Positions 44,102 through 61,448 of a DNA stretch of 64,000 nt are shown here, piece after piece (position 1 is the stretch's first letter; each line of letters starts with the position of its first letter). Location of the stretch: positions 1-64,000 of the IMG/VR virus record IMGVR_UViG_3300008259_005066. One strand, 5' to 3'. Under the pieces are notes generated by a model. It was given only the letters and a program-made list of their open reading frames with translations. It had not been told where the DNA came from and ran no database searches. The position numbers and the translations under genes are program-made.

Positions 44102-44119
44102 TGTTAGTGCGCACTTACC
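44102..44119. promoter_or_regulatory. 18-bp palindromic box, copy 1
   Basis: TGTTAGTGCGCACTTACC. Confidence 0.75.
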
Positions 44120-44124
44120 TAGTT

Positions 44125-44346
44125 CTAGCACCCTGCGTCCTGCGGTGGGCGCATGATGCTCCGGATTTCTGGAGAAATATACTGCGGGCGATTCTTGTGT
44201 CGGCGATACTGAGTGCGCAAGAACCATCGATACTGGCGCCAGTATTCCGTCATGGAATAAGGTGGTTCACCATAAGCATCATGCTCTTCGCAATTGGCCA
44301 ACCACATGTGGCGCAACCAAAGTCTGAAATCGGTTTCTTTTACCAT
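44125..44346 (-). CDS. Hypothetical protein
   Basis: Coupled ORF. Confidence 0.55.
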   Translation of the reverse strand: MVKETDFRLWLRHMWLANCEEHDAYGEPPYSMTEYWRQYRWFLRTQYRRHKNRPQYISPEIRSIMRPPQDAGC

Positions 44347-44750
44347 GATGAATTGTAGAATACTTTGAGACCCATGAACAATTCCGCACGGGCGTTTTTG
44401 ATAAACTCTAAGTCATCGTTGTAGTAGTCAGCATCGGAGTTGTTGCCGAAGAAGAAACCTTGTGTCTGGGGCAGTTCGCCATTCCGCACATCGTATTCCA
44501 GGCGTTCCAGCATGTCCCAGGTGATCTCCAGTTCATCACCATTGAACGAACCTTCGTTGCCCAGGCTTTCCCATTCGGCCCGAAACCAGCCGTGTAGGTT
44601 GGGATGCTTGCGCCAGTAGGCGATCTCTCTGGGTCGGGCCACGGTCTTGCTCTCATATTCGTTGCTACCTTGGGCCAACTCAGCCGTGTCCCAGAATTCT
44701 TTTTGTTGTCCAGCGCGGGCGGCCGCGTAAGCATACATGTCTAGACCCAT
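44340..44750 (-). CDS. Hypothetical phage protein
   Basis: MGLDMY...EIAYWRKHPNLHGW motif. Confidence 0.7.
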   Translation of the reverse strand: MGLDMYAYAAARAGQQKEFWDTAELAQGSNEYESKTVARPREIAYWRKHPNLHGWFRAEWESLGNEGSFNGDELEITWDMLERLEYDVRNGELPQTQGFFFGNNSDADYYNDDLEFIKNARAELFMGLKVFYNSSW

Positions 44751-44947
44751 TATCTCGTCCTCCGGTCATTGATTATTGGTGTGAAACGTTCTAAGAAACT
44801 TTCTATATAACATGAATGTTCATGACATTCAGGGCACTCCTGGTCACGATAATGCACCCAGGTGTGTCCATCTACATCTACCACATGGAGCACCACGAAT
44901 TCTTTGCCGTCGCTACTGCTCCACAGACTTCCTTGTTTCACTTGCAT
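44750..44947 (-). CDS. Hypothetical protein
   Basis: GGAG RBS; coupled ORF. Confidence 0.55.
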   Translation of the reverse strand: MQVKQGSLWSSSDGKEFVVLHVVDVDGHTWVHYRDQECPECHEHSCYIESFLERFTPIINDRRTR

Positions 44948-44956
44948 ATCTTCTCC

Positions 44957-45295
44957 TTACCTAATCTTTATTGTATCCTCTCTCGCTCGATCTGAATAAA
45001 ATTTATGACCAATCCTCCGCACAGTATCGGCCATCTGTTGTGGAGCATCTTCGAATGCCTGAGTGATATCTTCCACAGTGATGTCATCCTCTATTTCCAA
45101 GAGATAGATCTCGTAGTGCCTTTGCGTGTTGGCCTGGGCTCGTAAACGCCAGTGCATGAGGTTGGGCTCGGTTCGCACTTTGGTCAGATCCTGGCCTTTC
45201 AGTGCGGCCCACATCCTTTGCTGATTGATGTCAGTGACATTCACAGCGGCCTCCAAGCCCAGACAATCCCACATCAGCGCCACGGTCTTGCTCAT
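44957..45295 (-). CDS. Hypothetical protein
   Basis: Packed ORF. Confidence 0.6.
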   Translation of the reverse strand: MSKTVALMWDCLGLEAAVNVTDINQQRMWAALKGQDLTKVRTEPNLMHWRLRAQANTQRHYEIYLLEIEDDITVEDITQAFEDAPQQMADTVRRIGHKFYSDRAREDTIKIR

Positions 45296-45296
45296 A

Positions 45297-45764
45297 TCAA
45301 CTGCCGGTGCTCAACCGCAGATGCCCGGGTTTATCAGCGATGGGCTCAAATGATTCGATGAAGCAATGATGGCCATCGCCCGAGGCTTGTATGGCAGAGT
45401 CAGCGGCGCGATACAAGGCATTCCAATCTCGGCCTTCGATCTTGCGAACCACTTCACCACCGTCGCCCCAGTGCTGATCATAGACCACATACTCTGCGTC
45501 CTTGTAGGGATGGCATAGGGTCATGTTGTCCACTTCGTAGATGCTCCAGGTGCTGGTCAGCCCGTAGTGCCCACGCCAATGATCATATTGTTTCCATTTG
45601 CGGTCGAATGCCGCCGAATCTTGCTCGTAGGCACCTTTGAGGGCTACCTCGCGGATGCGTTCGACTAATTCAGACACTCGAGGATGGTCGATAGTGCTCA
45701 AAGCACAGAGGCTGTTGTGCAACACTTTGAATTCTTCTGCGGTCAGTGTAGGTGAACAGTTCAC
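45297..45764 (-). CDS. Hypothetical protein
   Basis: AAGGAG RBS; GTG start. Confidence 0.6.
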   Translation of the reverse strand: MNCSPTLTAEEFKVLHNSLCALSTIDHPRVSELVERIREVALKGAYEQDSAAFDRKWKQYDHWRGHYGLTSTWSIYEVDNMTLCHPYKDAEYVVYDQHWGDGGEVVRKIEGRDWNALYRAADSAIQASGDGHHCFIESFEPIADKPGHLRLSTGS

Positions 45765-45773
45765 ATTGTCTCC

Positions 45774-45965
45774 TTAACTATTGATGGTTCGATAAGGGCC
45801 AAGGTCTTCAAACACACCCCGGCGAGCAAGTTCTAATTCTAGCAAATCTCGCACCATGATGTCAACCACTCCCATGCTTTTGAGATCACGATACAGTTCG
45901 TATCTTTGTTTCAACACCACGATGTCGCTACGGGAGATTTCGGCTTTGATGTCTTCAAATTTCAT
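45774..45965 (-). CDS. Hypothetical protein
   Basis: AAGGAG RBS. Confidence 0.55.
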   Translation of the reverse strand: MKFEDIKAEISRSDIVVLKQRYELYRDLKSMGVVDIMVRDLLELELARRGVFEDLGPYRTINS

Positions 45966-45974
45966 GCTGTCTCC

Positions 45975-46316
45975 TTAGTCTAAGCGGCTACCAGCATAGG
46001 CACGGAAACCATACTTCTCAAAAATCTTGGCGGCCGCTTCGGCACCGGCTTCAAGAGTGTCAACGTTCTGGCAACCATAATTGGCTGGGTTCCAGATCTG
46101 CAGACCGCCTGAGTAACTCTTGCGCAGACCTGCTGTCTTGAGCATGCGACCCAATCGGGTATTACCTTTGATACCAAAGATGTCAACCCAGGCAAACCCA
46201 CAGGCCATCTGGTCTCGGCCGCCCAAACGAGTCTGGAAAAAATTGTCTGCGGCCTTGAATGCTTCGCTTTTGGCTTCGGCCACGATTGCGTTCACTTGAT
46301 CTTGAGTGTATTCCAT
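45975..46316 (-). CDS. Hypothetical phage protein
   Basis: AAGGAG RBS; ACGFAWV motif. Confidence 0.65.
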   Translation of the reverse strand: MEYTQDQVNAIVAEAKSEAFKAADNFFQTRLGGRDQMACGFAWVDIFGIKGNTRLGRMLKTAGLRKSYSGGLQIWNPANYGCQNVDTLEAGAEAAAKIFEKYGFRAYAGSRLD

Positions 46317-46326
46317 TTTGGGCTCC

Positions 46327-46626
46327 TTACTTGGAAAGGTTCATGATACGAGCATCGTGCTCGAGGAAATCAACTTCAAAAGGCACGTAGACCAGTTTGC
46401 CTACTCGGCTACCTCGGGTTCCTTCGGGCTGGTCTTCACCACCGAACACGTCACGGGTGGCTTTGATGCAGAAACATGAATAACCCATTTCAGGATTGTA
46501 ACCTTTGGTGATGACCTTGCCTTCCACATAGCAGTCTTCACGACCTGCCATGGGTTTGAAATCGTATGCACGGATGATGTCATCGATGTCCGCGGCATTG
46601 GTGAATTTCAGTGTTCTTTTTAACAT
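46327..46626 (-). CDS. Hypothetical SH3-like protein
   Basis: AAGGAG RBS; first gene behind a promoter. Confidence 0.6.
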   Translation of the reverse strand: MLKRTLKFTNAADIDDIIRAYDFKPMAGREDCYVEGKVITKGYNPEMGYSCFCIKATRDVFGGEDQPEGTRGSRVGKLVYVPFEVDFLEHDARIMNLSK

Positions 46627-46658
46627 AGGGCTAACTCCTTATCATTTACTATACCTAT

Positions 46659-46687
46659 ATTATAGCAAAATGGTAAATTTCGGTCAA
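46659..46687 (-). promoter_or_regulatory. Sigma70-type early promoter with extended -10
   Basis: TTGACC-17-TATAAT with TGn. Confidence 0.8.
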
Positions 46688-46705
46688 CCTGGGCAAAAAC
46701 CCGTA

Positions 46706-46723
46706 GGTTAGTGCCCACTTACC
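46706..46723. promoter_or_regulatory. 18-bp palindromic box, copy 2
   Basis: GGTTAGTGCCCACTTACC. Confidence 0.75.
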
Positions 46724-46985
46724 TAAAATACACCGCAAAACGGTTGGCATCTTGTTTCCAAGTGGTGCTTTGCCCGTGGTATCGATTTTTGCGCCCACGG
46801 AACATGATGTAGGTCTTGCGTCCGCTGAGGGCTCGGATGCGGGCCAGGATAGGGCGCACCTGTTCCAGGGCGCCAATGGGCACATCTTTGACTAGGCTGG
46901 ATTCTGTGGTGGGGCTGGCGAATGCTGTGAAGAACTGTTGATCTTCTCTGCTGAGATTGAACTGCGTCCATGGGTCCAGTTTCAT
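46719..46985 (-). CDS. Hypothetical protein
   Basis: AAAGGAG RBS; stop codon lies inside the palindrome. Confidence 0.6.
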   Translation of the reverse strand: MKLDPWTQFNLSREDQQFFTAFASPTTESSLVKDVPIGALEQVRPILARIRALSGRKTYIMFRGRKNRYHGQSTTWKQDANRFAVYFR

Positions 46986-47011
46986 AGGGCTCCTTTTTAA
47001 AGTATGTCCTA

Positions 47012-47040
47012 ATTATAGCAAAATGGCTATTTCTGGTCAA
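47012..47040 (-). promoter_or_regulatory. Sigma70-type early promoter with extended -10
   Basis: TTGACC-17-TATAAT with TGn. Confidence 0.8.
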
Positions 47041-47046
47041 CCGCGG

Positions 47047-47064
47047 GGTCAGTGGGCACTAACC
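47047..47064. promoter_or_regulatory. 18-bp palindromic box, copy 3
   Basis: GGTCAGTGGGCACTAACC. Confidence 0.7.
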
Positions 47065-47784
47065 TAGGGTCTGCCCAAAATGTTGGTATGCGTGTGGGTT
47101 GAGTTCGAATCCAACGAATCTACGTCCCAACCGGAGAGCGGCACGGCCCGTGGAGAACGATCCTCCAAAGGGATCCAGCACCAAGTCTCCTAGATTGGAA
47201 CTGTAATCGATGAACTTTTCAATGAACGATTCGGCCAACTGATTGTTGTTGCGGATCTCGCCCGTCTTGTATTCTCTAGGCAAGGTCTGCACACTGAGTC
47301 GGTCGTTGTATGATTCTGTGGTATCAGCAAAACGACAATGTGTGTTGAAGATCCTCTTCTGTTGGCCTCGTTCTCGCTTGGACCAGAACAGCACATGGTA
47401 ATGGCTCGAGACCCATTTCTTTTTGGTGTATACTCCAAAGGTGTATTGGGCGATGATATGATTGATTTCTTCGAGTTGTGTGTAGTGCAAGGCGTTGAGA
47501 ATATGATGTAGATTTGAATAGCCAGACACGATATACAAGGATCCACCGGGCCGCAACACTCGCTCACATTCCTGGATCCAGGCATGACACCATTGGGCAT
47601 ATTGATCTCTGGGCACATCCACATAACCGGCGATGACCTTGCTGTCGTCTCGATTGTAGTGCGTGTCTAGTTGATCACCGGCTATGCCATAGGGCGGATC
47701 AGTGAATATGAGATCTACTGTGCCATCGGCCACGTGTTCCTGCATGCCCACTACACAGTCCTGCTGGTAGATGCTATGTGTCAC
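47059..47784 (-). CDS. N6-adenine/N4-cytosine DNA methyltransferase (beta class)
   Basis: FTDPPY catalytic motif N-terminal; VLDPFGGS SAM-binding motif C-terminal. Confidence 0.9.
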   Translation of the reverse strand: MTHSIYQQDCVVGMQEHVADGTVDLIFTDPPYGIAGDQLDTHYNRDDSKVIAGYVDVPRDQYAQWCHAWIQECERVLRPGGSLYIVSGYSNLHHILNALHYTQLEEINHIIAQYTFGVYTKKKWVSSHYHVLFWSKRERGQQKRIFNTHCRFADTTESYNDRLSVQTLPREYKTGEIRNNNQLAESFIEKFIDYSSNLGDLVLDPFGGSFSTGRAALRLGRRFVGFELNPHAYQHFGQTLG

Positions 47785-48142
47785 GGCGGATATCAGAAAA
47801 TGTGTTTTCTACTTCCCACTCCACCCAGTTGCGGATGGTTTCGAATGGTATGGTTTCGTCCACCCACTCATATACATAGTCATTGTGTCCGCTGACGAGA
47901 TAATCACGGAAGGCTGCCTTGAGACGATGTTCCAGTTCTCGGATAGGGCGTTCGGGCCCAGACCAAGTGGCCGCCCAGCGCACTGCGTGTCCCACATGAC
48001 CTTCATAGCCATTTTGCCTGGAATCGAGATTGCCAGTGATACCAAAACAGGTGCGTGTGATCACTGCTTCGGTATCATCGTCCACATAACGATGGCGCCA
48101 AAGGTAAAAATTATGTGCGTCAGAGAGACTTGTATTCGTCAT
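47774..48142 (-). CDS. Hypothetical protein, degenerate GIY-YIG-like
   Basis: NFYL...FGITGNLDSRQNGY pattern. Confidence 0.45.
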   Translation of the reverse strand: MTNTSLSDAHNFYLWRHRYVDDDTEAVITRTCFGITGNLDSRQNGYEGHVGHAVRWAATWSGPERPIRELEHRLKAAFRDYLVSGHNDYVYEWVDETIPFETIRNWVEWEVENTFSDIRRDT

Positions 48143-49259
48143 AGTTTGGCACTGTGGGCAGAGGCAGTGTGCCTCCTTTTTTCATGTAGTCTTTGATCCA
48201 GATGGGCAACAGACAGGCATCCTTCCATCCCGATCCGGCCCATTTTTTGTAGCGTTGCCAGCAGTCTTGATGGAACGCTTTAGGCGACCCATAGCGTTTC
48301 ATGTGCTTGTAGAATTCTAGTTCATGCTCGCGAGTGATTTCTATGCCTTGGTTGCGACACAGCACAGCGAATCTACCAAACGTGATGAGATAGCCGCCAT
48401 CTACACCTTTTTCGCTGGCATAGAACTGATCATGCCACTTGAGCACCCAGTCAAGATCACCCTTGGTCACTTCAAAGTGGTCAGGTTCAGTGCCATGTCC
48501 GGCCAGCTTGAGCATGCTACTGACATGGGTTACCATACCGGGTTTGGCTCGTTGACCTTGTGCTTCTACTCCGGGAGCGGCAAACATGTTGTGCGATTGT
48601 AGCATGTTCTGTATCTCATTGGCCTGCAGGTCTTCAGTAAGTTCACTGTCATACAATCTGACACCATTGACCATGCTACGGAAAATATAGAACAGATCGG
48701 GCTCTTTGCGACCTTTGTAGTTGATGCAACGGAAACCATAGTTGCCCACTGCTTCACCTCGAAGTGTGGATCCTGGAACCTCAAGATCATCATCCACAAC
48801 CTTGCACTGAATCAGTGTGTCTGGATCGATCAATCCAAAGTAAAACATCAGTGCAAAGGCTGTTCCACTCTGTTGGCCCTCCCAGGCACTGTAGCGACCA
48901 GTGGCCTTGATGTAGATCACGTTCAAAGGTTGCATGATCCTGGGATCAAACAGTTCAATGATGTTGCCACCGATGTGCGCTTTTTCCAGCAGACGTTGGA
49001 TATCAATGTTGATGTCAATCAGATTTGGATCAATCAGTTCTAGGCGACCGAAGTGTTCCTGTTTGTATCGCTGACCACCAAGTCTAGCCTTCAGCGATTC
49101 AATGGCTTTTTCAATTACATCTTCGTTGGCGATGCCCATGGCACGTTGTACCAGAGGTTCGTAGATATTGCCCGTAGATACCAAAGGTGTCTGGATGTCT
49201 TTGGGAGGAGGTGCAAATGGATTGGTGCCTTTGGTTGCAGTTTTAAAATATGATGTCAT
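48120..49259 (-). CDS. ParB/Srx-like N-terminal domain protein
   Basis: LIDINIDIQRLL...YSAWEGQQ resembles the QR...DGQH pattern. Confidence 0.5.
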   Translation of the reverse strand: MTSYFKTATKGTNPFAPPPKDIQTPLVSTGNIYEPLVQRAMGIANEDVIEKAIESLKARLGGQRYKQEHFGRLELIDPNLIDINIDIQRLLEKAHIGGNIIELFDPRIMQPLNVIYIKATGRYSAWEGQQSGTAFALMFYFGLIDPDTLIQCKVVDDDLEVPGSTLRGEAVGNYGFRCINYKGRKEPDLFYIFRSMVNGVRLYDSELTEDLQANEIQNMLQSHNMFAAPGVEAQGQRAKPGMVTHVSSMLKLAGHGTEPDHFEVTKGDLDWVLKWHDQFYASEKGVDGGYLITFGRFAVLCRNQGIEITREHELEFYKHMKRYGSPKAFHQDCWQRYKKWAGSGWKDACLLPIWIKDYMKKGGTLPLPTVPNYDEYKSL

Positions 49260-49280
49260 GATGAGAAATTAAATTGAAGT

Positions 49281-50303
49281 TTAAAAAGGCCAGGATTTTT
49301 TGGATGCCACTGTTTGGCCAGTTTCAAAGGCCGGATCCCATGGTTCGTCTGGCTCATCTGATTGTGGACAGTTGTTCCAGTCAGACGTGTCCCAGTTCAA
49401 TCCTGTCCATGAAACCACACCATCCTGATCGATGGATTGCTCTTTGTTGTATTCAAAATCTACAAATGCCGTGCCGTTCCAATACAGTTTGCCAAAGGTG
49501 TTACCATAGCCCCAGTTGCATTCATACCAGCCTTGATGCACCGGTTTGTGTTTTTTAAACTTGAAAGAAATCTTTTCATCATCATCGGGGTAGTAACTGG
49601 CTGGCCAACCCGCACCACCGTTTTCTTCGCCTTCTGGAACAGCATCAGAGGGATCATAGGCTTCTTCGTCTCCACCAAAGATCCATTTGTTCTCGCCCCA
49701 CTTGCCTGTGGTGCTGAGATCGTTGTTGTCGATGGACTCACCGTCGTAGTCAACTCCGTTGCAGATATACCATCCATCAGCATTGGAGAAATTCAACATG
49801 AGTTTCTTGGGATCAAACGGTTCCTTGATTTCAAATTCGCCACCGAACAACAGACCCTTTTCACCCTGTGCTCCCCAGTAGGCCACTTCACCGTTTTTGA
49901 GATCGTCCATGGTAAATGATTCCCACTCATTGACTGGAATCTCAGAATCGTCCAGGGCATTGAGATCTAGGCTGTGTCGCCAAACTTCTTCACCGTTTTC
50001 GTCATACACAGTGATATAGTTGGTATCGTCCATGGTTGCGCCTGATGCATGCACTAAGCCATCGCATTCGTAGGGCGATCCAGGAGGAAAAGGTTGCATT
50101 TCATCGGGCACTTCTAGTTCGTTGTCCCAGTCAGATGCGAATTCGTCTAAATCAATATTGCGGCTCTGGAAGTATTGGTAGATTTTGCGATCAACGCGAC
50201 CAGCATACACTTCACCGCCATAGGCACCCAACTCCACACGATAGGTGCGAGGGGTGAATTTCAAAGTATTGATCAAATCTTGTTTCTGTTTACGAGTTGC
50301 CAT
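49281..50303 (-). CDS. Acidic hypothetical protein
   Basis: GAGGAG RBS before MATRKQ. Confidence 0.7.
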   Translation of the reverse strand: MATRKQKQDLINTLKFTPRTYRVELGAYGGEVYAGRVDRKIYQYFQSRNIDLDEFASDWDNELEVPDEMQPFPPGSPYECDGLVHASGATMDDTNYITVYDENGEEVWRHSLDLNALDDSEIPVNEWESFTMDDLKNGEVAYWGAQGEKGLLFGGEFEIKEPFDPKKLMLNFSNADGWYICNGVDYDGESIDNNDLSTTGKWGENKWIFGGDEEAYDPSDAVPEGEENGGAGWPASYYPDDDEKISFKFKKHKPVHQGWYECNWGYGNTFGKLYWNGTAFVDFEYNKEQSIDQDGVVSWTGLNWDTSDWNNCPQSDEPDEPWDPAFETGQTVASKKSWPF

Positions 50304-50442
50304 TGATGCTCTCCTCGGAACTGAAACAGTGTGGCACCCATCCACAGAAGGCTATGGCCCAGGCCACGGCCGCTGGGGTGTTCCAGGTCAGGGCAAACAT
50401 GGCGCCAGACAAGCCAGCGATCAAGATAGCAAGGATTTTCAT
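50290..50442 (-). CDS. Small membrane protein
   Basis: MKILAILIAGLSGAMFAL; 2 TM segments. Confidence 0.5.
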   Translation of the reverse strand: MKILAILIAGLSGAMFALTWNTPAAVAWAIAFCGWVPHCFSSEESINGNS

Positions 50443-50696
50443 TATTGTCGACCTTTCAATTCGCGCTCGATCTGTTTCTGCTCTAGATCGTATAGAGTGT
50501 AACTGAAACGAAACCAAGCACGGGCCGCGTCAATGACCACGATAGCACCACCTAGGATCGTCATGATCATGGGCCAGGGTTTGGGGCATCCGGCCGCTAG
50601 TGCAACCAAAGCCAGGATGGTCAACGCAAAGCCATAAAAACTGGGACTGCTCAGTGTGCCTTCAAACTGCCAACGTAAAAAACCTCGTATGTTCAT
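50442..50696 (-). CDS. Small membrane protein
   Basis: 2 TM segments; GGAG RBS. Confidence 0.55.
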   Translation of the reverse strand: MNIRGFLRWQFEGTLSSPSFYGFALTILALVALAAGCPKPWPMIMTILGGAIVVIDAARAWFRFSYTLYDLEQKQIERELKGRQ

Positions 50697-50698
50697 AG

Positions 50699-55029: not shown

Positions 55030-55141
55030 TTCTCCTTTGTAGAATGCTTGTATCACTAACTAAATCTTCAGACCTAGCTAGATTACATCTTCAGATGTAA
55101 TAAAATAATAGTATCAAACTGATTTTTAATACTATGCCATT

Positions 55142-55170
55142 AGTATAGCAAAGATATTTATTATTGTCAA
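55142..55170 (-). promoter_or_regulatory. Sigma70-type promoter
   Basis: TTGACA-17-TATACT with TGn. Confidence 0.7.
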
Positions 55171-55240
55171 CTCTCAGTATATCCAATTAAAATCAAATAG
55201 TCTAAAATATTTTTCTTTGCCACTGTGATCTCTGTGGCCA

Positions 55241-55444
55241 TTACCAATCTCCCGAGTCGATCCAAACCCGAATAGTAACACCAAGGAAGCCGCAGGCGTA
55301 GGTGTGTTCTGCGGCTCCCCATTCTGCTACCGTTTCATTCCTGGCCCAGGGTAACACCTTCCACCACAGTGGATTTAGTGCTACAATGACACTGACTCCG
55401 CTGTAGCGGACATACTGTCCAAATCTATGTATTTTGCCTGCCAT
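55241..55444 (-). CDS. Hypothetical protein
   Basis: Start MAGKIH. Confidence 0.5.
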   Translation of the reverse strand: MAGKIHRFGQYVRYSGVSVIVALNPLWWKVLPWARNETVAEWGAAEHTYACGFLGVTIRVWIDSGDW

Positions 55445-56201
55445 CGGTCGGCCCTTTCTTCGTGTCCAATGTAGCCGCGTGGGTTGCATACCACACGGGT
55501 TGATCCGATCATGTAATCAAAATCTTCGTGAGTGTGACCATGTGTCCATAACACGATCTCCGGGTGTGTTAGGATGAAGTTGAGGAACGGCTGGGCGCAT
55601 GATGTCCAACCACTACCACCCGGCGATCGCGCAGACCTTGATCTCTGCGGTTGTCCAGCACCACCCGGATGTAATCTCGCATGGCATAATGGTCTCGCAA
55701 GGTATGCTCGGGGATCAGTTTCCAGATGCCCGAAGCATGCCCAGAATTAGAATTGCGGATTCCGTGATAATCGTTCATGCCCCATGACGCATGTTGCATG
55801 GTCTGAAGATCGGCTCCGTTAAAGTCTGTCCACAAGGTGCCACCGATGAATGTCCAACCATCTATATCCCGGCACGCTTTTTCCAAAAGGTAAACATTGT
55901 GGAGATGGGTGTCGGCCAACATGTTTTTCAGGATGCTGTAACTCTTTGCAAAGTCTCCGTGATAGTGTTCATGATTGCCCATGACAAAAATCACATGAGG
56001 GAATGCCTCGCTTACACGCTGGAAGAAATCTCGTATGCGTTGGCTACGAGCACCTTCCATGAAATTGGTGGTATCCGGGCGACCGATGTCGCGGGCTACA
56101 CAGATATCGCCCGATAGGATCAGCACATCGGCTGACTCTGTGTTGGGGATATCACAATCTCCAAATTCCAGATGCACATCACTGGCTACTGCTACTTTCA
56201 T
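55381..56201 (-). pseudogene. Calcineurin-like metallophosphoesterase split by a frameshifting deletion near 55585
   Basis: SDVH, SGDI, MGNHE and GHHAP in one frame; LWTHGHTH and CNPRGY in another. Confidence 0.85.
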
Positions 56202-56547
56202 TTAATTGCTCTTTCAGTTGTTGGAGAACTGCTTCGTCACCGGCCACCACGCTCACACGTATGTTGGACCAGCGGGCTTTGATGCGCTCTCTCAGTTCGG
56301 TCAAGGTATTGCCTTGTGCCATAAATTCATTGGTTTGATCATTATACACGAAAAACATGCCTTGATGCGACTCCACACGGCACGGTATCATGTCTTCTTC
56401 GTGATATTGCTCTATGGCCTTCTCTAGGTCCTGTAATTCTTTGCTGGCTCGGGCCACAGTGATATGCACGGCCATTTTCATCACAAGATAGAACAGCCAT
56501 ATGCCCAGGAGCATGCCCAGGATACCACCTACAATAAAATCACTCAT
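56179..56547 (-). CDS. Membrane-anchored hypothetical protein
   Basis: N-terminal TM segment. Confidence 0.6.
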   Translation of the reverse strand: MSDFIVGGILGMLLGIWLFYLVMKMAVHITVARASKELQDLEKAIEQYHEEDMIPCRVESHQGMFFVYNDQTNEFMAQGNTLTELRERIKARWSNIRVSVVAGDEAVLQQLKEQLNESSSSQ

Positions 56548-57073
56548 CTTTGATCAGTCCTTTGTCTTTGGCACCTTGTATATACCATTCTGTCAAGGGC
56601 TCTTCGTCTTCGTATTCGGCCATGGTTTCTGAGATGGCGAACCAATCGTCTAGATCCGGGGGCAAGGCTTCTTTGGCGGCCTTGCTGTCCATGTCTGTGA
56701 GATCGTAGTTGTCGTCTGAACCGCCAGAGTAGATCCCTGCGAACGCACAACCAGGCTCATAATACATGGCTTCCACATCAAATCCTTGATCGAGCATGAC
56801 ATCATAGGCCGCTGTGGGCGGTGCCCAAGCCGAATCAAAGTTCACGGTCATGCTTCGACCATCATCAGAGATGTCAGGTTCACCATAATCTTTGCCGCCC
56901 ACGTCCCATTTGGTTCCCCAATGTTCGCATGACCATTCATAGTTCCATTCACTGCTGGGATTGGGCACCAATTCTTGTAGGAGTTCTCCGCGTTGGAACG
57001 CATCGGCCGCGCGACGTATTTGTGCAGGATCTTCGTGCGACAGGGTCAAAGTGTTGGAACACCAGTTGGGCAT
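56540..57073 (-). CDS. YubB ferredoxin-like/DUF1281-type protein
   Basis: MPNWCSN...WSCEHWGTKWD...FDSAWAPP...YYEPGCAFAG. Confidence 0.7.
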   Translation of the reverse strand: MPNWCSNTLTLSHEDPAQIRRAADAFQRGELLQELVPNPSSEWNYEWSCEHWGTKWDVGGKDYGEPDISDDGRSMTVNFDSAWAPPTAAYDVMLDQGFDVEAMYYEPGCAFAGIYSGGSDDNYDLTDMDSKAAKEALPPDLDDWFAISETMAEYEDEEPLTEWYIQGAKDKGLIKDE

Positions 57074-57077
57074 GGCC

Positions 57078-57542
57078 TTACTCCTTGTTGTTTAGCAAAC
57101 GTCTCAGTTGGAAATATTCGTTGTGGGGGATCCACTTGTTGTTAAACAAAAATCCCCATTCGCGTCGATGTGGTCCGGGCATGAACAAGGTCCAGGCAGT
57201 CACACCCGGTTTGAGTTCAATGCGATGGTAACTGCCAGCACCACAGATGCGGAAATGTCCGGGGCCACGCCAGTGACGAATCTCACTGGATTTGCGCCCT
57301 TGGCTATCAAACTGTGGAACCCATTCATAGTATCCGCCTTTCAATATCAGAGTGGCATAGGGCCAGGGATGATCATGCACATCGTGGGGATCACCCTTGA
57401 GGAATCGGTGCAAGAACACATTGAACGGAAACCGTTGGCGATCCTTGAGGAATAGATAATATCTTTCCAGATAAGGTTCGTCGTCCTGGCGATCCATGAT
57501 CACCCGATGTCGTCCTAATCGTTGCATGAGTTTTTTTAGCAT
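57078..57542 (-). CDS. Cupin-like protein
   Basis: HDHPW...LKGGYYE...SYHRI. Confidence 0.65.
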   Translation of the reverse strand: MLKKLMQRLGRHRVIMDRQDDEPYLERYYLFLKDRQRFPFNVFLHRFLKGDPHDVHDHPWPYATLILKGGYYEWVPQFDSQGRKSSEIRHWRGPGHFRICGAGSYHRIELKPGVTAWTLFMPGPHRREWGFLFNNKWIPHNEYFQLRRLLNNKE

Positions 57543-57547
57543 ATCTA

Positions 57548-57576
57548 ATTATAGCAAAAAAGAAATTACCGGTCAA
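57548..57576 (-). promoter_or_regulatory. Sigma70-type promoter, probably leaderless
   Basis: TTGACC-17-TATAAT with TGn; ATG lies 6 nt past the -10 box. Confidence 0.75.
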
Positions 57577-57578
57577 TC

Positions 57579-57608
57579 AAAAAAAAAAGGCTACCGTGGT
57601 AGCCTTTT
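57579..57608 (-). terminator. Intrinsic terminator
   Basis: GGCTAC-4nt-GTAGCC with a long T tract. Confidence 0.85.
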
Positions 57609-57649
57609 GGACAAGGGTGACCAATTTGGGTTGGCCAGCGAACCTTTGA

Positions 57650-57919
57650 TTAGACCGTGATACCCATGGCCTGTGCTTTGTATGCCAAAGCAACCATGTT
57701 ACGGCTTGGTTTGCCCAACACATACTCAGTCACGTTCACACCATTACCTGCGGTGCGACGGTTGGTGTAGACAGCGAATCCATGCTGGCGGATGCGATGG
57801 ATTTCGGCGTTGAGATTGCCGATGCCCATTTTCTTGGCCTTGGATTCGGTCACGGGTTGACCATTTTGCAGTGCTTTGAGCACACGGAACGTCTTGGTTT
57901 CGGGATTGATAAATTTCAC
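57650..57919 (-). CDS. Winged helix-turn-helix-like protein
   Basis: RVLKALQNG...GIGNLNAEIHRIRQHGFAV...wing; GTG start. Confidence 0.6.
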   Translation of the reverse strand: MKFINPETKTFRVLKALQNGQPVTESKAKKMGIGNLNAEIHRIRQHGFAVYTNRRTAGNGVNVTEYVLGKPSRNMVALAYKAQAMGITV

Positions 57920-58111
57920 AGTATTACCTTTCTATAGTAAGTCGCTGTGTTTTACAGCGTGTTATAATAATACACTATGTCGGCAGTAAGATCTACGATT
58001 TTGGTAGAATTACTGCTGTGAGTTTACCCATCTTGTATCATTGAAACGTGATATATAGCATTGTGGGCAGGATGGTCTTGCTCACACCGCTTTTATCCAA
58101 TTGGAGGAATC

Positions 58112-58270
58112 ATGAAAGCAATCGCAACTCTTATCGCTGGTCTTTTTGCCGCTGGTGTGGCCGTCGCCCAGACACCCGCTCCTGCTAAGAAAGAAGAGCC
58201 AAAAAAAGCCGAAGTGAAGAAAGAAGAAAAGAAGGACAAGAAAGACGAAAAGAAAGAAGCCAAGAAGTAA
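58112..58270 (+). CDS. Small secreted K/E-rich protein
   Basis: GGAGG RBS; signal MKAIATLIAGLFAAGVAVA; KKEE repeats. Confidence 0.8.
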   Translation: MKAIATLIAGLFAAGVAVAQTPAPAKKEEPKKAEVKKEEKKDKKDEKKEAKK

Positions 58271-58296
58271 TCCAGGCTCACCGGGTTTTCGAAAGG

Positions 58297-58325
58297 ATAA
58301 ACCGCCCTTGAGGCGGTTTATTTTT
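58297..58325 (+). terminator. Intrinsic terminator between convergent genes
   Basis: ATAAACCGCC-CTTGA-GGCGGTTTAT-TTTT. Confidence 0.85.
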
Positions 58326-58719
58326 GGGCAGTTTGCAGTTCGTCCACATGCCGACAATGGCGTCGGAATCCAAATCCGGGACAGGTGCATGACCAGTGTC
58401 CGGCCGAAAGATTGACAAAATATTGGTTGCCTTTGCTCCCTTGCACAGTCCAGATCTCACCTTGAGGTTCTGGCTCTTTGGCAGGGGCTTCGGTCTGTAT
58501 TGATAGATCGAACTTCCAGGTGTTCTTTTTGACTTCTTCAAACTTTCTGCCCCTGCGATCCATGCGGAGAAAGGTCTTCTTGTATTGGGGCTCGCTTTGA
58601 CCCCATTTGGAGTAGGCATAGACCTTGTCGCCATCCATGAGATACACATGGTTGGGCAGGCGATATTCCACGCCCTTCCATTCAGTGACTTCGCGCATGA
58701 TCTTCAGCGCCACGATCAC
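58318..58719 (-). CDS. SWIM zinc-finger protein
   Basis: GSKGNQYFV...WSCTCPGF...CRH. Confidence 0.8.
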   Translation of the reverse strand: MIVALKIMREVTEWKGVEYRLPNHVYLMDGDKVYAYSKWGQSEPQYKKTFLRMDRRGRKFEEVKKNTWKFDLSIQTEAPAKEPEPQGEIWTVQGSKGNQYFVNLSAGHWSCTCPGFGFRRHCRHVDELQTAQK

Positions 58720-58994
58720 ATGCTCCAGTAGGATTCGGATGCAGGCGAGCAGAAGTAAGGAGTGTTCACATCTTCTTGGAACTCCTGGCCTGACATCAAA
58801 TTCCGACGAGTGACCATGCGTGGTTGGTAATCGCGGGTGTGAGTGATTTCAAACTCGTTGCCCTTCCAACCGGCTTTCTTGACCAATCTAGTGATGGTGG
58901 CCTTGGCGGCACCTTGAGTGCGATAGGCACGAGTGCGATTTGGGCCATCCGAAACGATGAGTCCTGTGGCTTTGACTATGATGTAATATGACAT
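58716..58994 (-). CDS. Hypothetical protein
   Basis: AAGGAG RBS; TPYFCSPASESYWSM tail. Confidence 0.7.
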   Translation of the reverse strand: MSYYIIVKATGLIVSDGPNRTRAYRTQGAAKATITRLVKKAGWKGNEFEITHTRDYQPRMVTRRNLMSGQEFQEDVNTPYFCSPASESYWSM

Positions 58995-59023
58995 ATCTGC
59001 TCCTTGATGTTTACTATACCTAT

Positions 59024-59053
59024 ATTATAACCGAAAATGGCTTTTTTGGTCAA
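59024..59053 (-). promoter_or_regulatory. Sigma70-type early promoter
   Basis: TTGACC-18-TATAAT. Confidence 0.75.
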
Positions 59054-59059
59054 CCGCTA

Positions 59060-59077
59060 GGTTAGTGCGCACTTACC
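59060..59077. promoter_or_regulatory. 18-bp palindromic box, copy 4
   Basis: GGTTAGTGCGCACTTACC. Confidence 0.75.
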
Positions 59078-59303
59078 TAGTGAAAAATAACCCTACAAGG
59101 TATATGGACAATAAGCCCACGTTCACAGTGATCATGGCACGGTCGCGGATACGCACGGCCCATAGCACAAAAACCAAACTGCCTAGATTCAGCAGATATA
59201 CGTTCAAAGGATCAATGCGGAGGCTGGTGCAGAGTGCTCCAGCCAGGGTTACGATAGTTCCGGCCCATTTGAGGCCCCAGGTGATTCGGTCATTTCTTAG
59301 CAT
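59073..59303 (-). CDS. Small membrane protein (about 3 TM)
   Basis: Hydrophobic; probably leaderless start; stop codon lies in the palindrome. Confidence 0.6.
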   Translation of the reverse strand: MLRNDRITWGLKWAGTIVTLAGALCTSLRIDPLNVYLLNLGSLVFVLWAVRIRDRAMITVNVGLLSIYLVGLFFTR

Positions 59304-59309
59304 ACCCAT

Positions 59310-59339
59310 ATTATAACCGAAATCACTATTTCTGGTCAA
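59310..59339 (-). promoter_or_regulatory. Sigma70-type promoter
   Basis: TTGACC-18-TATAAT. Confidence 0.7.
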
Positions 59340-60130
59340 CCAGCGGTTTCTGCGGCTATGCGATCCAGGGCAAAGTCCCTGTAGTTTGCATCAATTTCAA
59401 AGCCCATCCATGACAGACCACAGCGATGGGCCGCGATGGCAGTAGTGCCTGATCCCATGAATGGGTCCAGCACAGTGCCTGATGTGATGCCTGACACACG
59501 GATGCAATTTTCGGCCAAGGCCACAGGAAAAGTGGCCGGATGATCGCCTCGATGCTTGGCCCGGTTGCTGATGGTCTCATAGGGTATGAACCAGGTGTTG
59601 CCACGACAGCGTAGATTGGGTTTGGTTCCGGCAGTCTTGGGATTGCGTAGATTCTCCGCATAGTATTCGTAGGGCACACCAATGGTGAGTTTGTCCAATG
59701 GGCTCCGACCTGCCTTGGTGAAATGGAACACATGCTCCCATGTGGGAGCGATGTAACGTTCGGAGTTCACTGGTTTGAAGTGTCCCGATGTCTTTCCGTT
59801 GACATAGATCGATTTGACCCACATCACGGAATTCTGGAGCACGAAATGATCACGAGCCACCTGCGCCACGTCTTGTGCCACCCAGGGATCTTGATTGCTG
59901 TAACCTACGTTGAGCCAGAAGTGTCCGTCATCGGTCAGCACTCTTTTGATCTCGCCGAACACCGACCCCAGCCATCGGAGATAGTCCTGCCGTGGCCGGT
60001 CGTCGCGATAGGTGCTGTAACCAATGCCCAGGTTGTAGGGCGGAGAAGTCACGCAGATATCGACACTGGCTTCGGGCAAGGCCTGCATGCCTGTGACGCA
60101 GTCCTGCAATATGATGTTATTTTTATCCAA
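59336..60130 (-). CDS. N4-cytosine/N6-adenine DNA methyltransferase (beta class)
   Basis: VTSPPY, HPATFP and VLDPFMGSGTT. Confidence 0.92.
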   Translation of the reverse strand: MDKNNIILQDCVTGMQALPEASVDICVTSPPYNLGIGYSTYRDDRPRQDYLRWLGSVFGEIKRVLTDDGHFWLNVGYSNQDPWVAQDVAQVARDHFVLQNSVMWVKSIYVNGKTSGHFKPVNSERYIAPTWEHVFHFTKAGRSPLDKLTIGVPYEYYAENLRNPKTAGTKPNLRCRGNTWFIPYETISNRAKHRGDHPATFPVALAENCIRVSGITSGTVLDPFMGSGTTAIAAHRCGLSWMGFEIDANYRDFALDRIAAETAG

Positions 60131-60578
60131 ACAGTCGTTCTCGTTCTTGTGTGGGTATCTTGCCCGCAGGATAGTTTTCTACCAATTCGGTTCCACGTTT
60201 GAACACGATGCGCACCCGGGGGAATTCTGTGATATCACTCAGTATGTAGTCGATGGTGAGAGCATGCTCATGCAATTTCTCTCTATCGATCTTGCGCCCG
60301 GCACCCAGCATGTTGCTGGGAGCATAACTGGCACCACCGCGGGTGAAGCCTTTGAGGTCCAGCCTGCGACCAGTGGATGTCTGCACATGATCATAGCCGT
60401 CTTGATCCACGTATTCTAGATCTTCGAACCATACTGGCAAGATGTTCTCCAGGAACTTGCTGGCCACACGACCATCCTGGAACAAGTCATGCACGGTATC
60501 TATGGGCAGATCACCAAACTGCACCCGGCCCGTGAGGTCAAACTCAAAGGTATGATCGTATCGGATCTGCTGTTTCAT
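60123..60578 (-). CDS. Possible PD-(D/E)xK nuclease-fold protein
   Basis: FLE...GYDHV...LDLKGF spacing; overlaps the methyltransferase start. Confidence 0.45.
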   Translation of the reverse strand: MKQQIRYDHTFEFDLTGRVQFGDLPIDTVHDLFQDGRVASKFLENILPVWFEDLEYVDQDGYDHVQTSTGRRLDLKGFTRGGASYAPSNMLGAGRKIDREKLHEHALTIDYILSDITEFPRVRIVFKRGTELVENYPAGKIPTQERERLFG

Positions 60579-60850
60579 ACTCGTTCCAAAAGGTTGGCCG
60601 GAACATTGTAGCGACCACCCAGTGTCTGCACCAGGATAAATTTCTGCTTCACACGGTCCACGGTGCCAAAGATGTCCTGGCCCAGTTTGGGATGATAGAA
60701 CTTCACCGGAGTGCCCACACGGATGGTGACTTTTACTTCTTGTCCAATCTGGCGCCGGCGATACTTGATGGCCAGGGCGATGGCATTGAGTTGATCATTG
60801 GTGAAATCGCCGTGCATGATTTCGTGATTGACTTCGCTGATTGTGGGCAT
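60575..60850 (-). CDS. Hypothetical SH3-like protein
   Basis: AAGGAG RBS. Confidence 0.65.
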   Translation of the reverse strand: MPTISEVNHEIMHGDFTNDQLNAIALAIKYRRRQIGQEVKVTIRVGTPVKFYHPKLGQDIFGTVDRVKQKFILVQTLGGRYNVPANLLERV

Positions 60851-60980
60851 GTGTATCTCCTTGTGATATAATAAGTGCTGATTTTTCTTTATAGTCTATA
60901 ATCAGCAAAAATAGACTGCTTCGGGTTCTGGGGTATCAAGGCTCCCCAAGGCAGGCACCTGCCTATCACGGCCTCAAACA

Positions 60981-61355
60981 TCAAGCCGCCTTACGGAAAT
61001 AACCGTAAGGCAGGCCCAGTTGGAAACAGAGATACTCATCGTCTCCCTGGGTATCGTGTGATTCATGCAACCAACGTATCGCTGTCGCACGATCCCGGGC
61101 ACCTGAACGCATCAGGGTGTCAATGGCTTTCTCCACCCGGGCCGTGGCCTCGGCTTCGCTTTCGCGGCGTTGGGCTTCTTCGGCTTCGATGACCTGACCT
61201 AGGGATGCAAACTCGCGGTCGAAATCCGCCAAGGTCCAGCCGCTGGTGTCGATGCCACGTGGGCGCACACCGTAGGCGTCTTTATACATGTCCCAGAAAG
61301 TGCATGATGCACGTTCTAGATCTGACATTTCTTCCCAAGATTTAAAGTCGCTCAT
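60981..61355 (-). CDS. Hypothetical phage protein
   Basis: AAGGAG RBS; WDMYKDAYGVRPRG motif. Confidence 0.7.
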   Translation of the reverse strand: MSDFKSWEEMSDLERASCTFWDMYKDAYGVRPRGIDTSGWTLADFDREFASLGQVIEAEEAQRRESEAEATARVEKAIDTLMRSGARDRATAIRWLHESHDTQGDDEYLCFQLGLPYGYFRKAA

Positions 61356-61384
61356 TGTTGCTCCTTGTGTATCACTATACCCAA

Positions 61385-61413
61385 ATTATAGCAAAATGGC
61401 GATTTCTGGTCAA
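61385..61413 (-). promoter_or_regulatory. Sigma70-type early promoter with extended -10
   Basis: TTGACC-17-TATAAT with TGn. Confidence 0.8.
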
Positions 61414-61430
61414 CCTGGGCAAAAACACTG

Positions 61431-61448
61431 GGTTAGTGCGCACTAACC
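61431..61448. promoter_or_regulatory. 18-bp palindromic box, copy 5 (perfect)
   Basis: GGTTAGTGCGCACTAACC equals its own reverse complement. Confidence 0.8.

What the first reader, a model, noticed from the sequence alone, without database searches (positions are those of the whole stretch)
44102..61448. 18-bp palindrome in two helically phased positions upstream of early promoters
Seen: five copies of GGTTAGTGCGCACT(A/T)ACC-like DNA at 44102, 46706, 47047, 59060 and 61431. Each lies upstream of a TTGACC/TATAAT promoter, with gaps to the -35 box of 17, 18, 6, 6 and 17 bp. The two classes differ by about one helical turn (centres near -51 and -62). Established: face-of-helix spacing is typical of dimeric activators such as CRP at -61.5. 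Inference: the operator of an unidentified phage or host factor defining an early regulon. In three cases the upstream gene's stop codon lies in the box, so an RNA-level role is also possible.
Basis: partly seen in the sequence, partly recalled or inferred. Interest (0 to 1): 0.75.

Follow-up and report, generated by a model that had tools for sequence, protein, structure and literature searches.

The report
Operator-like palindrome before phage early promoters
An 18-bp palindrome sits at fixed, helix-phased distances upstream of about a third of the strong host-type early promoters of an uncultured freshwater jumbo phage and its relatives; it looks like the binding site of an unidentified dimeric regulator, not an RNA hairpin.

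Summary
All five copies are at the stated coordinates (0.01 expected by chance). A sixth lies at 96192-96209 of the same 209.5-kb virus record.

The window is part of a freshwater jumbo myovirus. Its portal is about 50% identical to those of PA5oct, Atu_ph07 and RaK2-type phages.

The box is GGTWAGT-N4-ACTWACC. [quoted passage not shown] This is the layout of the PeSL cassettes of T4-type phages.

In a survey anchored on promoters, 57 of 242 unique contexts from related phages carry the box. The gaps to the -35 hexamer cluster at 5-8, 16-19, 36-37 and 49 bp (Rayleigh R 0.83 at period 10.5). Twenty-eight different 17-bp spacers are only 53% alike yet keep their length.

The arms show no compensatory changes, the predicted hairpins are weak, and ordinary terminators lie before or after the box. 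The same 18-mer lies next to TetR- or ArsR-family regulator genes in bacteria.

Best reading: a DNA operator for an unidentified dimeric regulator that modulates a subset of early promoters. No binder was found, and whether it activates or represses is unknown.

The parts
44102..44119 (-). Box copy 1 (GGTAAGTGCGCACTAACA on the gene strand); 17 bp from the -35 hexamer
44085..44101 (-). 17-bp long-class spacer with a T4 tract at about -46..-43 and invariant GG next to the -35 hexamer
44055..44084 (-). Promoter TTGACC-N18-TATAAT of the conserved module
43315..44037 (-). First gene after box-promoter 1 (240 aa, no family match)
46706..46723 (-). Box copy 2; contains the TAA stop of ORF 46719-46985; 18 bp from the -35 hexamer
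46659..46687 (-). Promoter TTGACC-N17-TATAAT, heading an operon of eight small ORFs down to 44125
46719..46985 (-). 88-aa ORF lying between two box-promoter cassettes
47047..47064 (-). Box copy 3; contains the TAG stop of the DNA methyltransferase gene 47059-47784; 6 bp from the -35 hexamer
47012..47040 (-). Promoter TTGACC-N17-TATAAT
59060..59077 (-). Box copy 4; contains the TAA stop of the DUF6552 ORF; 6 bp from the -35 hexamer
59024..59053 (-). Promoter TTGACC-N18-TATAAT, followed by four small ORFs up to the terminator at 57585-57608
61431..61448 (-). Box copy 5 (perfect palindrome); 17 bp from the -35 hexamer
61385..61413 (-). Promoter TTGACC-N17-TATAAT
59310..59339 (-). Promoter of the same module without a box (comparison case); appears leaderless, with the ATG 6 nt after the -10 hexamer
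57548..57576 (-). Promoter of the same module without a box, directly preceded by an ordinary terminator
57585..57608 (-). Ordinary intrinsic terminator (10-bp stem, T10; -13 kcal/mol), used for comparison with the box

Best explanation
The box (7-bp arms GGTWAGT / ACTWACC around 4 variable bases, often extended by TA on each side) is a double-stranded DNA operator for a symmetric dimeric DNA-binding protein that has not been identified. It forms the upstream module of PeSL-like early-promoter cassettes in a clade of freshwater jumbo myoviruses. The bound protein would sit on one face of the helix relative to host sigma-70 RNA polymerase, centred near -51, -62, -82 or -93. In the -62 class an A/T tract at about -46..-43 lies between box and -35, where an alpha-CTD could dock. 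The protein would modulate a subset, about one third, of otherwise equivalent strong early promoters. Shown: the sequence conservation, the spacing classes, the lack of base-pair covariation, the independence from terminators, and the use of the same sequence next to regulator genes in bacteria. Inferred: that a protein binds, that it touches RNA polymerase, and that the promoters are early. The sign of the effect is open. I lean slightly towards damping or timed shut-off, because the core promoters are near-consensus and work without the box elsewhere. The binder may be a host TetR- or ArsR-type regulator or a phage protein of a fold that family models do not recognise.
For: (1) Sequence-specific conservation without covariation. 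In 55 unique boxes, arm positions carry 1.3-2.0 bits while the flanking spacer carries 0.2-0.5 bits. Position 4/15 is T.A in 30 boxes and A.A in 17, and never A.T. Pairs 8/11 and 1/18 vary independently (A.T seen 2 and 1 times, against 1.9 and 1.2 expected). The ordinary terminators in the same cassettes do change their stems in a compensated way.
(2) Spacing to the -35 hexamer. The gap histogram is 5(2), 6(7), 7(5), 8(2), 10(1), 16(2), 17(29), 18(2), 19(2), 36(1), 37(3), 49(1). For 49 contexts with distinct flanks, R = 0.83 at period 10.5, and no uniform-null trial in 20000 reached that value. The 28 distinct 17-bp spacers have a median identity of 53% but the same length; 22 carry a T tract and 3 an A tract at the same place.
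(3) The box stays with the promoter, not with the upstream gene. It keeps its place when a terminator precedes it (L074, L067, L185, L030, L024, L177, L070, L015). It also pairs with promoters of different sequence (G002 82812, L026, G001 51296).
(4) Orthologous promoters switch between the classes: 17 versus 7 bp; 6 versus about 16 bp versus no box; and 36, 7, 5 or 17 bp before the 'MSKKH' gene.
(5) The hairpins are weak: median -6 kcal/mol, and -1.5 to -8.1 for the six copies in this genome, against about -13 for real terminators. Only one of the five window copies passes even a lenient terminator rule.
(6) Of 120 bacterial loci holding the exact pattern GGTTAGTGNNCACTAACC, 96 have a TetR- or ArsR-signature gene within 900 nt, often with a second box. 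Pfam confirms TetR_N or HTH_5 in the eight regulator genes tested.
(7) Tandem boxes, 32 bp centre to centre, precede a leaderless GIY-YIG gene in three lineages.
Against: No binding protein was found. The phages have no HTH_3, TetR_N or HTH_20 matches. Thirty-nine ORFs are shared by the box-rich genomes G001 and G002 and absent from box-free G007; none of the 20 tested against Pfam (10 of them also against PHROGs) shows a DNA-binding family, and two further candidates gave nothing in the Atlas. The host is unknown. The promoters are already near-consensus, so the benefit of an upstream site is unclear. The -51 position is not one used by classical class I or class II activators such as CRP (from memory). 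The spacing classes could partly reflect two cassette families spread by recombination rather than independent selection. G.T combinations outnumber A.C by 26 to 13, a weak hint of tolerance for wobble pairs on the sense strand. No transcript data exist.
Confidence: 0.55

Rival explanations
1. The box is the stem-loop of a PeSL-type cassette and acts on RNA. It folds in read-through transcripts from the upstream gene and attenuates transcription, or protects the upstream mRNA's 3' end, as proposed for the stem-loops of T4-type PeSLs.
For: The layout matches PeSLs: stop codon, inverted repeat, near-consensus sigma-70 promoter, SD and ATG, repeated in an ORFan-rich region. In four of the five window copies the upstream stop lies in the box. 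Long-class spacers carry a T tract 5-7 nt after the box. G.T exceeds A.C by 26 to 13.
Against: There are no compensatory changes, and an A.A mismatch sits mid-stem in 17 of 55 boxes. Median folding energy is -6 kcal/mol. The short class has no U tract at all, and three long-class spacers carry an A tract instead. Ordinary terminators occur immediately before the box in at least eight contexts, so little read-through RNA would contain it. Constant spacing to the -35 hexamer has no meaning for an RNA element.
Confidence: 0.15
2. The box is mainly a recombination element: a conserved junction at which ORFan cassettes are exchanged between phages, through homology or a nuclease acting on the palindrome. 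It would have no direct role in transcription.
For: Gene blocks that differ between G000 and G002 are bounded by box-promoter cassettes (G000 47.0-49.3 kb against G002 82.8-85.1 kb). Orthologous promoters differ in box class or presence. PeSLs were shown to recombine, in RB49 inside the stem-loop's loop. The box is most consistently found before a GIY-YIG nuclease gene.
Against: Homology-driven exchange would homogenise the spacer as well, yet spacers are only 53% alike. It does not explain helix-phased spacing to the -35 hexamer. The GIY-YIG gene is absent from box-rich G001 and present in box-poor G006. This reading does not exclude the operator reading.
Confidence: 0.15
3. One reading: a CRP-like class I activator site that these promoters need in order to fire.
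For: Dimer-type palindrome; centres at -61.5, -81.5 and -93.5; an A/T tract where alpha-CTD would sit.
Against: The -35 and -10 hexamers match 11 of 12 consensus positions. Promoters of the same module work in the same operon contexts without the box, and orthologues lose it. The frequent -50.5/-51.5 class is not a CRP class I position, and the sequence is unlike TGTGA-N6-TCACA (from memory).
Confidence: 0.1
4. A functionless hitchhiker: a repeat that spread with the promoter cassette.
For: All copies lie in cassettes that are themselves repeated.
Against: The box is conserved among phages whose proteins are only about 50% identical, while adjacent bases are not. The box also occurs with unrelated promoter sequences.
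Confidence: 0.05

Closest known systems
PeSL cassettes (promoter-early stem-loop) of T4-type phages (Arbiol et al. 2010, PMC2839356; Comeau et al. 2014, PMC4122927)
   Same: [quoted passage not shown] It occurs in many copies in ORFan-rich variable regions and flanks indels between related phages. The phage belongs to the T4 superfamily (T4-like portal, sheath and gp46-like protein).
   Different: PeSL stem-loops are G-tract/C-tract or AAAGGG/CCCTTT-type terminators shown to terminate. Here that role is filled by separate AAAACCCT..AGGGTTTTT terminators. The box is an additional weakly pairing element, conserved in sequence without covariation, at fixed helix-phased distances from the -35 hexamer.
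Operators of bacterial TetR- and ArsR-family regulators
   Same: The identical 18-mer pattern GGTTAGTGNNCACTAACC lies in intergenic regions beside TetR genes (Microbacteriaceae, Streptomyces, Actinomadura and others) and ArsR-family genes (Acidobacteria, Actinomycetota, a Gammaproteobacteria MAG), often in tandem. The 7-4-7 geometry suits one HTH dimer. The ArsR-linked sites also alternate GTTAGT and GTAAGT, like position 4 of the phage box.
   Different: In bacteria the sites overlap or adjoin the regulator's own promoter, the usual arrangement for an auto-repressor. In the phage they lie upstream of the -35 hexamer, and no such regulator gene was found in the phage genomes.
Class I activator sites (CRP at -61.5, -71.5, -82.5, -92.5; MarA/SoxS at about -52/-62) - from memory
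   Same: Palindrome on one helix face, centred near -61.5, -81.5 and -93.5, with room for alpha-CTD between the site and the -35 hexamer.
   Different: The promoters are near-consensus, the commonest short class is centred at -50.5/-51.5, and the sequence is unrelated to CRP sites.
Global regulons of mobile elements with palindromic operators in position classes (KorB OB sites of IncP plasmids; phi29 p4 repressing strong promoters through alpha-CTD) - from memory
   Same: One palindrome repeated upstream of many strong sigma-70 promoters of a mobile genome, in discrete distance classes, with the possibility of repression through contact with RNA polymerase.
   Different: There is no sequence similarity beyond a TTAG..CTAA flavour, and no ParB/KorB or p4 homologue was detected.

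Membership tests
PeSL cassette | Near-consensus sigma-70-type early promoter | tested here: met
   TTGACC-N17/18-TATAAT, 11 of 12 consensus positions, all on the gene strand
PeSL cassette | Sequence able to form a stem-loop just upstream of the promoter, starting at the upstream stop codon | tested here: met
   The 7+4+7 inverted repeat overlaps the upstream stop codon in four of the five window copies
PeSL cassette | The stem-loop is a stable terminator or attenuator | tested here: not met
   Energies of -1.5 to -8.1 kcal/mol, no adjacent U tract, no covariation, and separate ordinary terminators in the same cassettes. This is computation only; no termination assay was possible.
PeSL cassette | SD and start codon at the 3' end; many copies in variable ORFan regions that flank indels between relatives | tested here: met
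   GGAG followed by ATG after each promoter. Synteny breaks between G000 and G002 lie at cassettes.
PeSL cassette | Recombination between cassettes (mini-circles) | not testable with these tools
   Only an indirect hint: the same promoter has a different box spacing in a related strain
Intrinsic terminator | G+C-rich stem directly followed by a U tract | tested here: not met
   One of five copies passes a lenient scan. The T tract, where present, starts 5-7 nt after the stem and is replaced by an A tract in three spacers.
Intrinsic terminator | Pairing kept by compensatory change | tested here: not met
   an A.A mismatch in 17 of 55 boxes; no excess of double changes
CRP-type class I activator site | Palindrome on one helix face at about -61.5, -71.5, -82.5 or -92.5 | tested here: inconclusive
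   Met for the -61.5, -81.5 and -93.5 classes. The -50.5/-51.5 class (16 contexts) is not such a position.
CRP-type class I activator site | Weak core promoter that depends on the activator | tested here: not met
   Core promoters match 11 of 12 positions, and copies and orthologues without a box exist
TetR/ArsR-type operator | Palindrome of about 16-20 bp with a short variable centre, found beside the regulator gene | tested here: met
   Geometry. The identical pattern lies beside TetR or ArsR genes in 96 of 120 bacterial loci.
TetR/ArsR-type operator | A cognate regulator present in the system | tested here: not met
   No TetR_N or HTH_20 match in five phage records. The host genome is unknown, so a host regulator cannot be tested.

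The most novel reading that the evidence does not exclude
A whole clade of freshwater jumbo phages has wired about a third of its early ORFan operons, including a leaderless GIY-YIG nuclease gene with tandem sites, to one dimeric regulator. That regulator may be a host ArsR- or TetR-type sensor with a conserved GTWAGT-N4-ACTWAC specificity. It would act from class-I-like, helix-phased positions on promoters that are already near-consensus, so that the early programme is gated by a signal from the host or the phage. Related lineages seem to have replaced the module with other upstream elements (a GTGTTGT-A5-ACAACAC repeat; Fur-box-like repeats).
Probability: 0.25. Interest if true: 0.75.

Novelty: new variant of a known kind. 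Interest (0 to 1): 0.55.

Why it matters
Early promoters of large virulent phages are usually treated as constitutive, strong host-type promoters that are switched off globally. A sequence-specific operator serving only a subset of them, kept at helix-phased positions across phages whose proteins are only about 50% identical, would mean gene-specific control inside the early class. It could also be a route by which host physiology feeds into the first minutes of infection. In addition it refines the PeSL concept: in this lineage the 'stem-loop' part of the cassette splits into an ordinary terminator and a separate operator-like element. The box gives a short, defined bait for finding the regulator by pull-down once a host is available.

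Tried and rejected
- Near-identity search of 8 kb against the phage collection: no match.
- Transcript evidence: the only RNA run that holds this region covers a single 259-nt contig. The other runs are DNA or of unknown kind, so no 5' or 3' ends could be read.
- Search for a phage-encoded binder:
  - HTH_3, Sigma70_r4, TetR_N and HTH_20 models against up to five phage records gave nothing above cut-off.
  - Phylogenetic profiling (present in box-rich G001 and G002, absent from box-free G007) gave 39 ORFs. Among the 20 tested, the only family matches were GDSL lipase, Bax1-I, Laminin_G_3, HIT, HhH-GPD and OCRE, none of them a DNA-binding regulator.
  - Atlas look-ups of two small early proteins gave only unnamed phage clusters or DUF4222.
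- The GIY-YIG nuclease as binder: rejected, because its presence does not follow box abundance.
- The 54-aa HTH-like ORF after the GIY-YIG gene: it occurs in only a subset of box-bearing phages and is absent from G001.
- First genes after the box-promoters in the window: no Pfam family except DUF6552.
- Literature search for the motif strings: only noise.
- Motifs recalled from memory and set aside because spacing or orientation does not fit: CRP; LexA of Xanthomonadales (same TTAGT/ACTAA arms but 2 bp more between them); NrdR box (half-sites everted); DtxR/IdeR iron box (same TAGGTWAG half-site but 5 bp less between them); PaaR (same 7-mers, everted); KorB.


Full report
OBSERVATION. The pattern GGTTAGTGCGCACTWACC, allowing up to 3 mismatches, matches at exactly the five stated places (44102, 46706, 47047, 59060, 61431). 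Shuffles expect 0.01 matches. Genes in this part of the window are on the - strand. Read on that strand, each box is followed by TTGACC-N17/18-TATAAT after 17, 18, 6, 6 and 17 bp. The consensus scan lists the same promoters at 11 of 12 positions; all eleven sites scoring 11 or more are on the - strand. The stop codon of the upstream ORF lies inside the box in four of the five window copies. The window is the first 64 kb of a 209.5-kb IMG/VR virus record estimated 60% complete. A sixth box lies at 96192-96209 of that record, 36 bp from its promoter, with an ordinary terminator in between.

WHAT THE GENOME IS. PHROG matches identify a tail sheath, a T4-type portal, NrdA and a gp46/SbcC-like protein. 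The portal is about 50% identical to those of Pseudomonas phage PA5oct, Agrobacterium Atu_ph07, Sinorhizobium Phosso and RaK2/121Q-type coliphages. The DNA is found in lake and freshwater metagenomes. Related records of 320-353 kb, some with terminal repeats, exist in IMG/VR. This is therefore an uncultured freshwater jumbo myovirus of the T4 superfamily. PA5oct is reported to use host RNA polymerase from TTGAC/TATAATA promoters (PMC7318152).

THE CASSETTE. The promoters are not just two hexamers. About 60 nt are conserved: GG, TTGACC, a spacer AGAAATnGCCATTTnG, TATAAT, then ataGGTATAGTAAa, GGAG and ATG. There are nine copies in this record, six of them with a box. Upstream stop codon, inverted repeat, near-consensus sigma-70 promoter, SD and ATG, repeated among small ORFans, is the architecture described as PeSL in T4-type phages (PMC2839356 and PMC4122927).

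UNBIASED SURVEY. An exact-box search in viral contigs found 32 loci, nearly all with the same kind of promoter downstream. To avoid circularity I then anchored on promoters, using five related records plus 119 loci found through the promoter spacer.
- Of 242 unique promoter contexts, 57 have a box with at most 2 mismatches in the 12 fixed arm positions. Background starts at 4 mismatches.
- The gaps are 5(2), 6(7), 7(5), 8(2), 10(1), 16(2), 17(29), 18(2), 19(2), 36(1), 37(3), 49(1).
- After collapsing contexts with similar flanks and adding six box-side finds, 49 contexts give a resultant length of 0.83 at period 10.5, with the maximum at 10-10.5. None of 20000 uniform-null trials reached this.
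- The 28 distinct 17-bp spacers have a median pairwise identity of 53% yet one length. Twenty-two carry a T tract and three an A tract at about -46..-43, and GG next to the -35 hexamer is invariant.
- Caveat: cassettes are related by descent and probably by recombination, so the contexts are not fully independent. The 36/37 class rests on about two independent loci.

BOX SIDE. In the nearly complete G002, 7 of the 8 good boxes are followed by a sigma-70-type promoter. One of these promoters has a quite different sequence (82812: 8 bp, then TTGACA-N17-TATACT). G001 has 5-6 such boxes. The complete genomes G006 and G007 have one and none, although they carry 30-40 promoters of the same kind.

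ORTHOLOGOUS SITES. The G000 region 64->40 kb is collinear with G002 68-91 kb.
- The promoter before the 240-aa gene has gap 17 in G000 and gap 7 in G002.
- P59053 has gap 6 in G000, no box in G002, and about 16 bp in a strain seen in run X24.
- The promoter before the 'MSKKH' gene upstream of the DNA ligase has gap 36, 7, 5 or 17 in four genomes, with a terminator between or in front.
- The block G000 47.0-49.3 kb (379-aa ORF, 122-aa ORF and a methyltransferase), together with the adjacent 88-aa ORF at 46719-46985, is replaced by other genes in G002 82.8-85.1 kb. The replaced block is bounded by box-promoter cassettes.
This is PeSL-like modular shuffling, and it shows that the spacing classes are interchangeable.

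DNA SITE OR RNA HAIRPIN.
- In 55 unique boxes the arms carry 1.3-2.0 bits per position (0.9 bits at the variable position 4), the four central bases 0.1-1.3 bits and the flanks 0.2-0.8 bits, with a tendency to TA on both sides.
- Position 4 is T (35) or A (18) while its partner stays A. This gives an A.A mismatch in 17 boxes and never the compensated A.T.
- Pairs 8/11 and 1/18 vary independently.
- Deviations such as A1.C18, C3.A16 and C7.A12 are uncompensated.
- By contrast, the AAAACCCTnn..nnAGGGTTTTT terminators in the same cassettes change their stems in a compensated way.
- Predicted RNA hairpins have a median of -6 kcal/mol. The six copies of this genome fold at -1.5, -6.2, -7.8, -8.1, -7.7 and -6.2, against -12.5 and -13.0 for two real terminators.
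- The short class has no U tract at all.
- In at least eight contexts an ordinary terminator ends 3-4 nt before the box, so the box would rarely be transcribed from upstream, yet it keeps its place relative to the -35 hexamer.
- The one point in favour of RNA is that G.T combinations outnumber A.C by 26 to 13.
- Stop codons in the box are explained by its sequence: TAG or TAA in the left arm, TAA in the right arm, and often TAG just after.

THE SAME SEQUENCE IN BACTERIA.
- About half or more are one orthologous intergenic site of Microbacteriaceae, between a TetR-family gene and a carboxyltransferase gene. They have a second, degenerate box before the TetR start.
- Tandem boxes precede TetR genes in Streptomyces, Actinomadura and Leifsonia.
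- ArsR-family genes adjoin the site in Acidobacteria, Gaiellales, Actinomycetota and a Gammaproteobacteria MAG.
- Two Clostridia have the site before feoA.
- By a signature search, 96 of the 120 loci have a TetR- or ArsR-type gene within 900 nt.
- The Microbacterium regulator is homologous to solved mycobacterial TetR proteins and the ArsR one to solved ArsR proteins.
The box therefore has the sequence and geometry of a working HTH-dimer operator. This is support by analogy only: no such regulator is encoded by the phages and the host is unknown.

MECHANISM. The most economical reading is an operator bound by a symmetric dimer that acts on host RNA polymerase from one face of the helix. In the -62 class an A/T tract lies where alpha-CTD docks in class I complexes (established for CRP at lac; from memory). 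In the -51 class the box itself occupies the UP-element position.
- The core promoters are near-consensus.
- Two thirds of equivalent promoters lack the box.
- Orthologues gain and lose it.
The site is therefore accessory. It could boost recruitment, or, as with phi29 p4 on strong promoters (from memory), hold polymerase or displace alpha-CTD to damp or time a subset of early operons. I cannot decide the sign. Tandem boxes before a leaderless GIY-YIG nuclease gene in three lineages would suit tight repression.

WHAT FAILED. No transcript ends could be obtained. The search for a phage-encoded binder gave nothing.

VERDICT. The element is a new variant of the PeSL kind of early-promoter cassette, carrying a separate operator-like module. 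Confidence in the operator reading is about 0.55, and interest is 0.55.

Noticed in passing
window 44061-44078, 46665-46681, 61391-61407 (promoter spacers); same in all related records: The 17-18 bp between the -35 and -10 hexamers are themselves conserved across phages with about 50% protein identity (AGAAATnGCCATTTnG, an imperfect AAAT..ATTT inverted repeat). This is unusual for promoter spacers. It could be a second protein site or an effect of cassette recombination.
   Followed up: partly
window 44041-44054, 46645-46658, 59010-59023: The initially transcribed region ataGGTATAGTAAa is conserved after the -10 hexamer and contains a second -10-like TATAGT. The tool scan flags it as an overlapping promoter at 46677 and 61402.
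   Followed up: no
window 59301-59339 and 57540-57576: Two promoters of the same module appear leaderless, with the ATG 6 and 5 nt after the -10 hexamer and no SD. One encodes a DUF6552 protein. The TGA stop of the methyltransferase gene 59336-60130 lies inside the -35 hexamer of P59339.
   Followed up: partly
window 47059-47784 and 59336-60130: Two DNA methyltransferase genes (phrog_67) each end at or next to a promoter cassette. Both are absent from the syntenic region of G002, so they look like accessory cassette cargo.
   Followed up: partly
L049:244-585 (G002 180023-180361) and about 13 other lineages: A 113-aa leaderless GIY-YIG protein gene is the gene most regularly preceded by the box, with tandem boxes 32 bp apart in L010, L072 and L142. 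It is not in the 209-kb fragment of this genome.
   Followed up: yes
L203:3673-3717 (G000 127673-127717); G006 promoters at 1359, 115043, 117031, 126828, 283686, 284042, 319936: A second upstream element, GTGTTGT-A5-ACAACAC (or at least AAAAACAACAC), precedes many early promoters in box-poor G006. It ends 9-10 or 20-22 nt before the -35 hexamer, again two classes about one helical turn apart. One copy precedes P127672 of this genome.
   Followed up: partly
L215:14953-15042 (G006 114953-115042): In G006 and L136 the GIY-YIG promoter has no box. Instead it has two or three Fur-box-like repeats (GATAATATTATCGATAAT) further upstream, which suggests that upstream modules are swapped between lineages.
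   Followed up: no
L285:6102-6119 and about 60 other Microbacteriaceae loci; L286, L289, L309, L333, L385; L297, L319: The exact 18-mer is a conserved intergenic site beside TetR genes (divergent from a carboxyltransferase gene) in Microbacteriaceae, beside ArsR-family genes in several phyla, and before feoA in two Clostridia. As far as I could find, these bacterial operators are uncharacterised.
   Followed up: partly
L336 (contig DITO01000251.1, binned as Erysipelotrichaceae UBA6182): This 4.6-kb contig carries the phage promoter module and a perfect box. It is probably a fragment of a phage of this clade wrongly binned into a bacterial MAG.
   Followed up: no
window 46719-46985: The 88-aa ORF between two cassettes begins MKLDPWTQFNLSRED. 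The stretch QFNLSRED matches the middle of a 54-aa HTH-like ORF that follows the GIY-YIG gene in G002. It looks like a recombination scar where a promoter cassette replaced the 5' half of a gene.
   Followed up: partly
window 59055 (run X24): A related strain in a public run has the same promoter P59053 with a different spacer and the box about 16 bp away instead of 6. This is strain-level switching between the two spacing classes.
   Followed up: partly
G001 306871-306888 and G002 153918-153935: A box-like palindrome GGTCAGTATTCACTGACT is conserved at the 3' end of an orthologous gene in two genomes, with no promoter downstream. Here positions 4 and 15 are C and G, i.e. complementary, unlike in the promoter boxes.
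   Followed up: no
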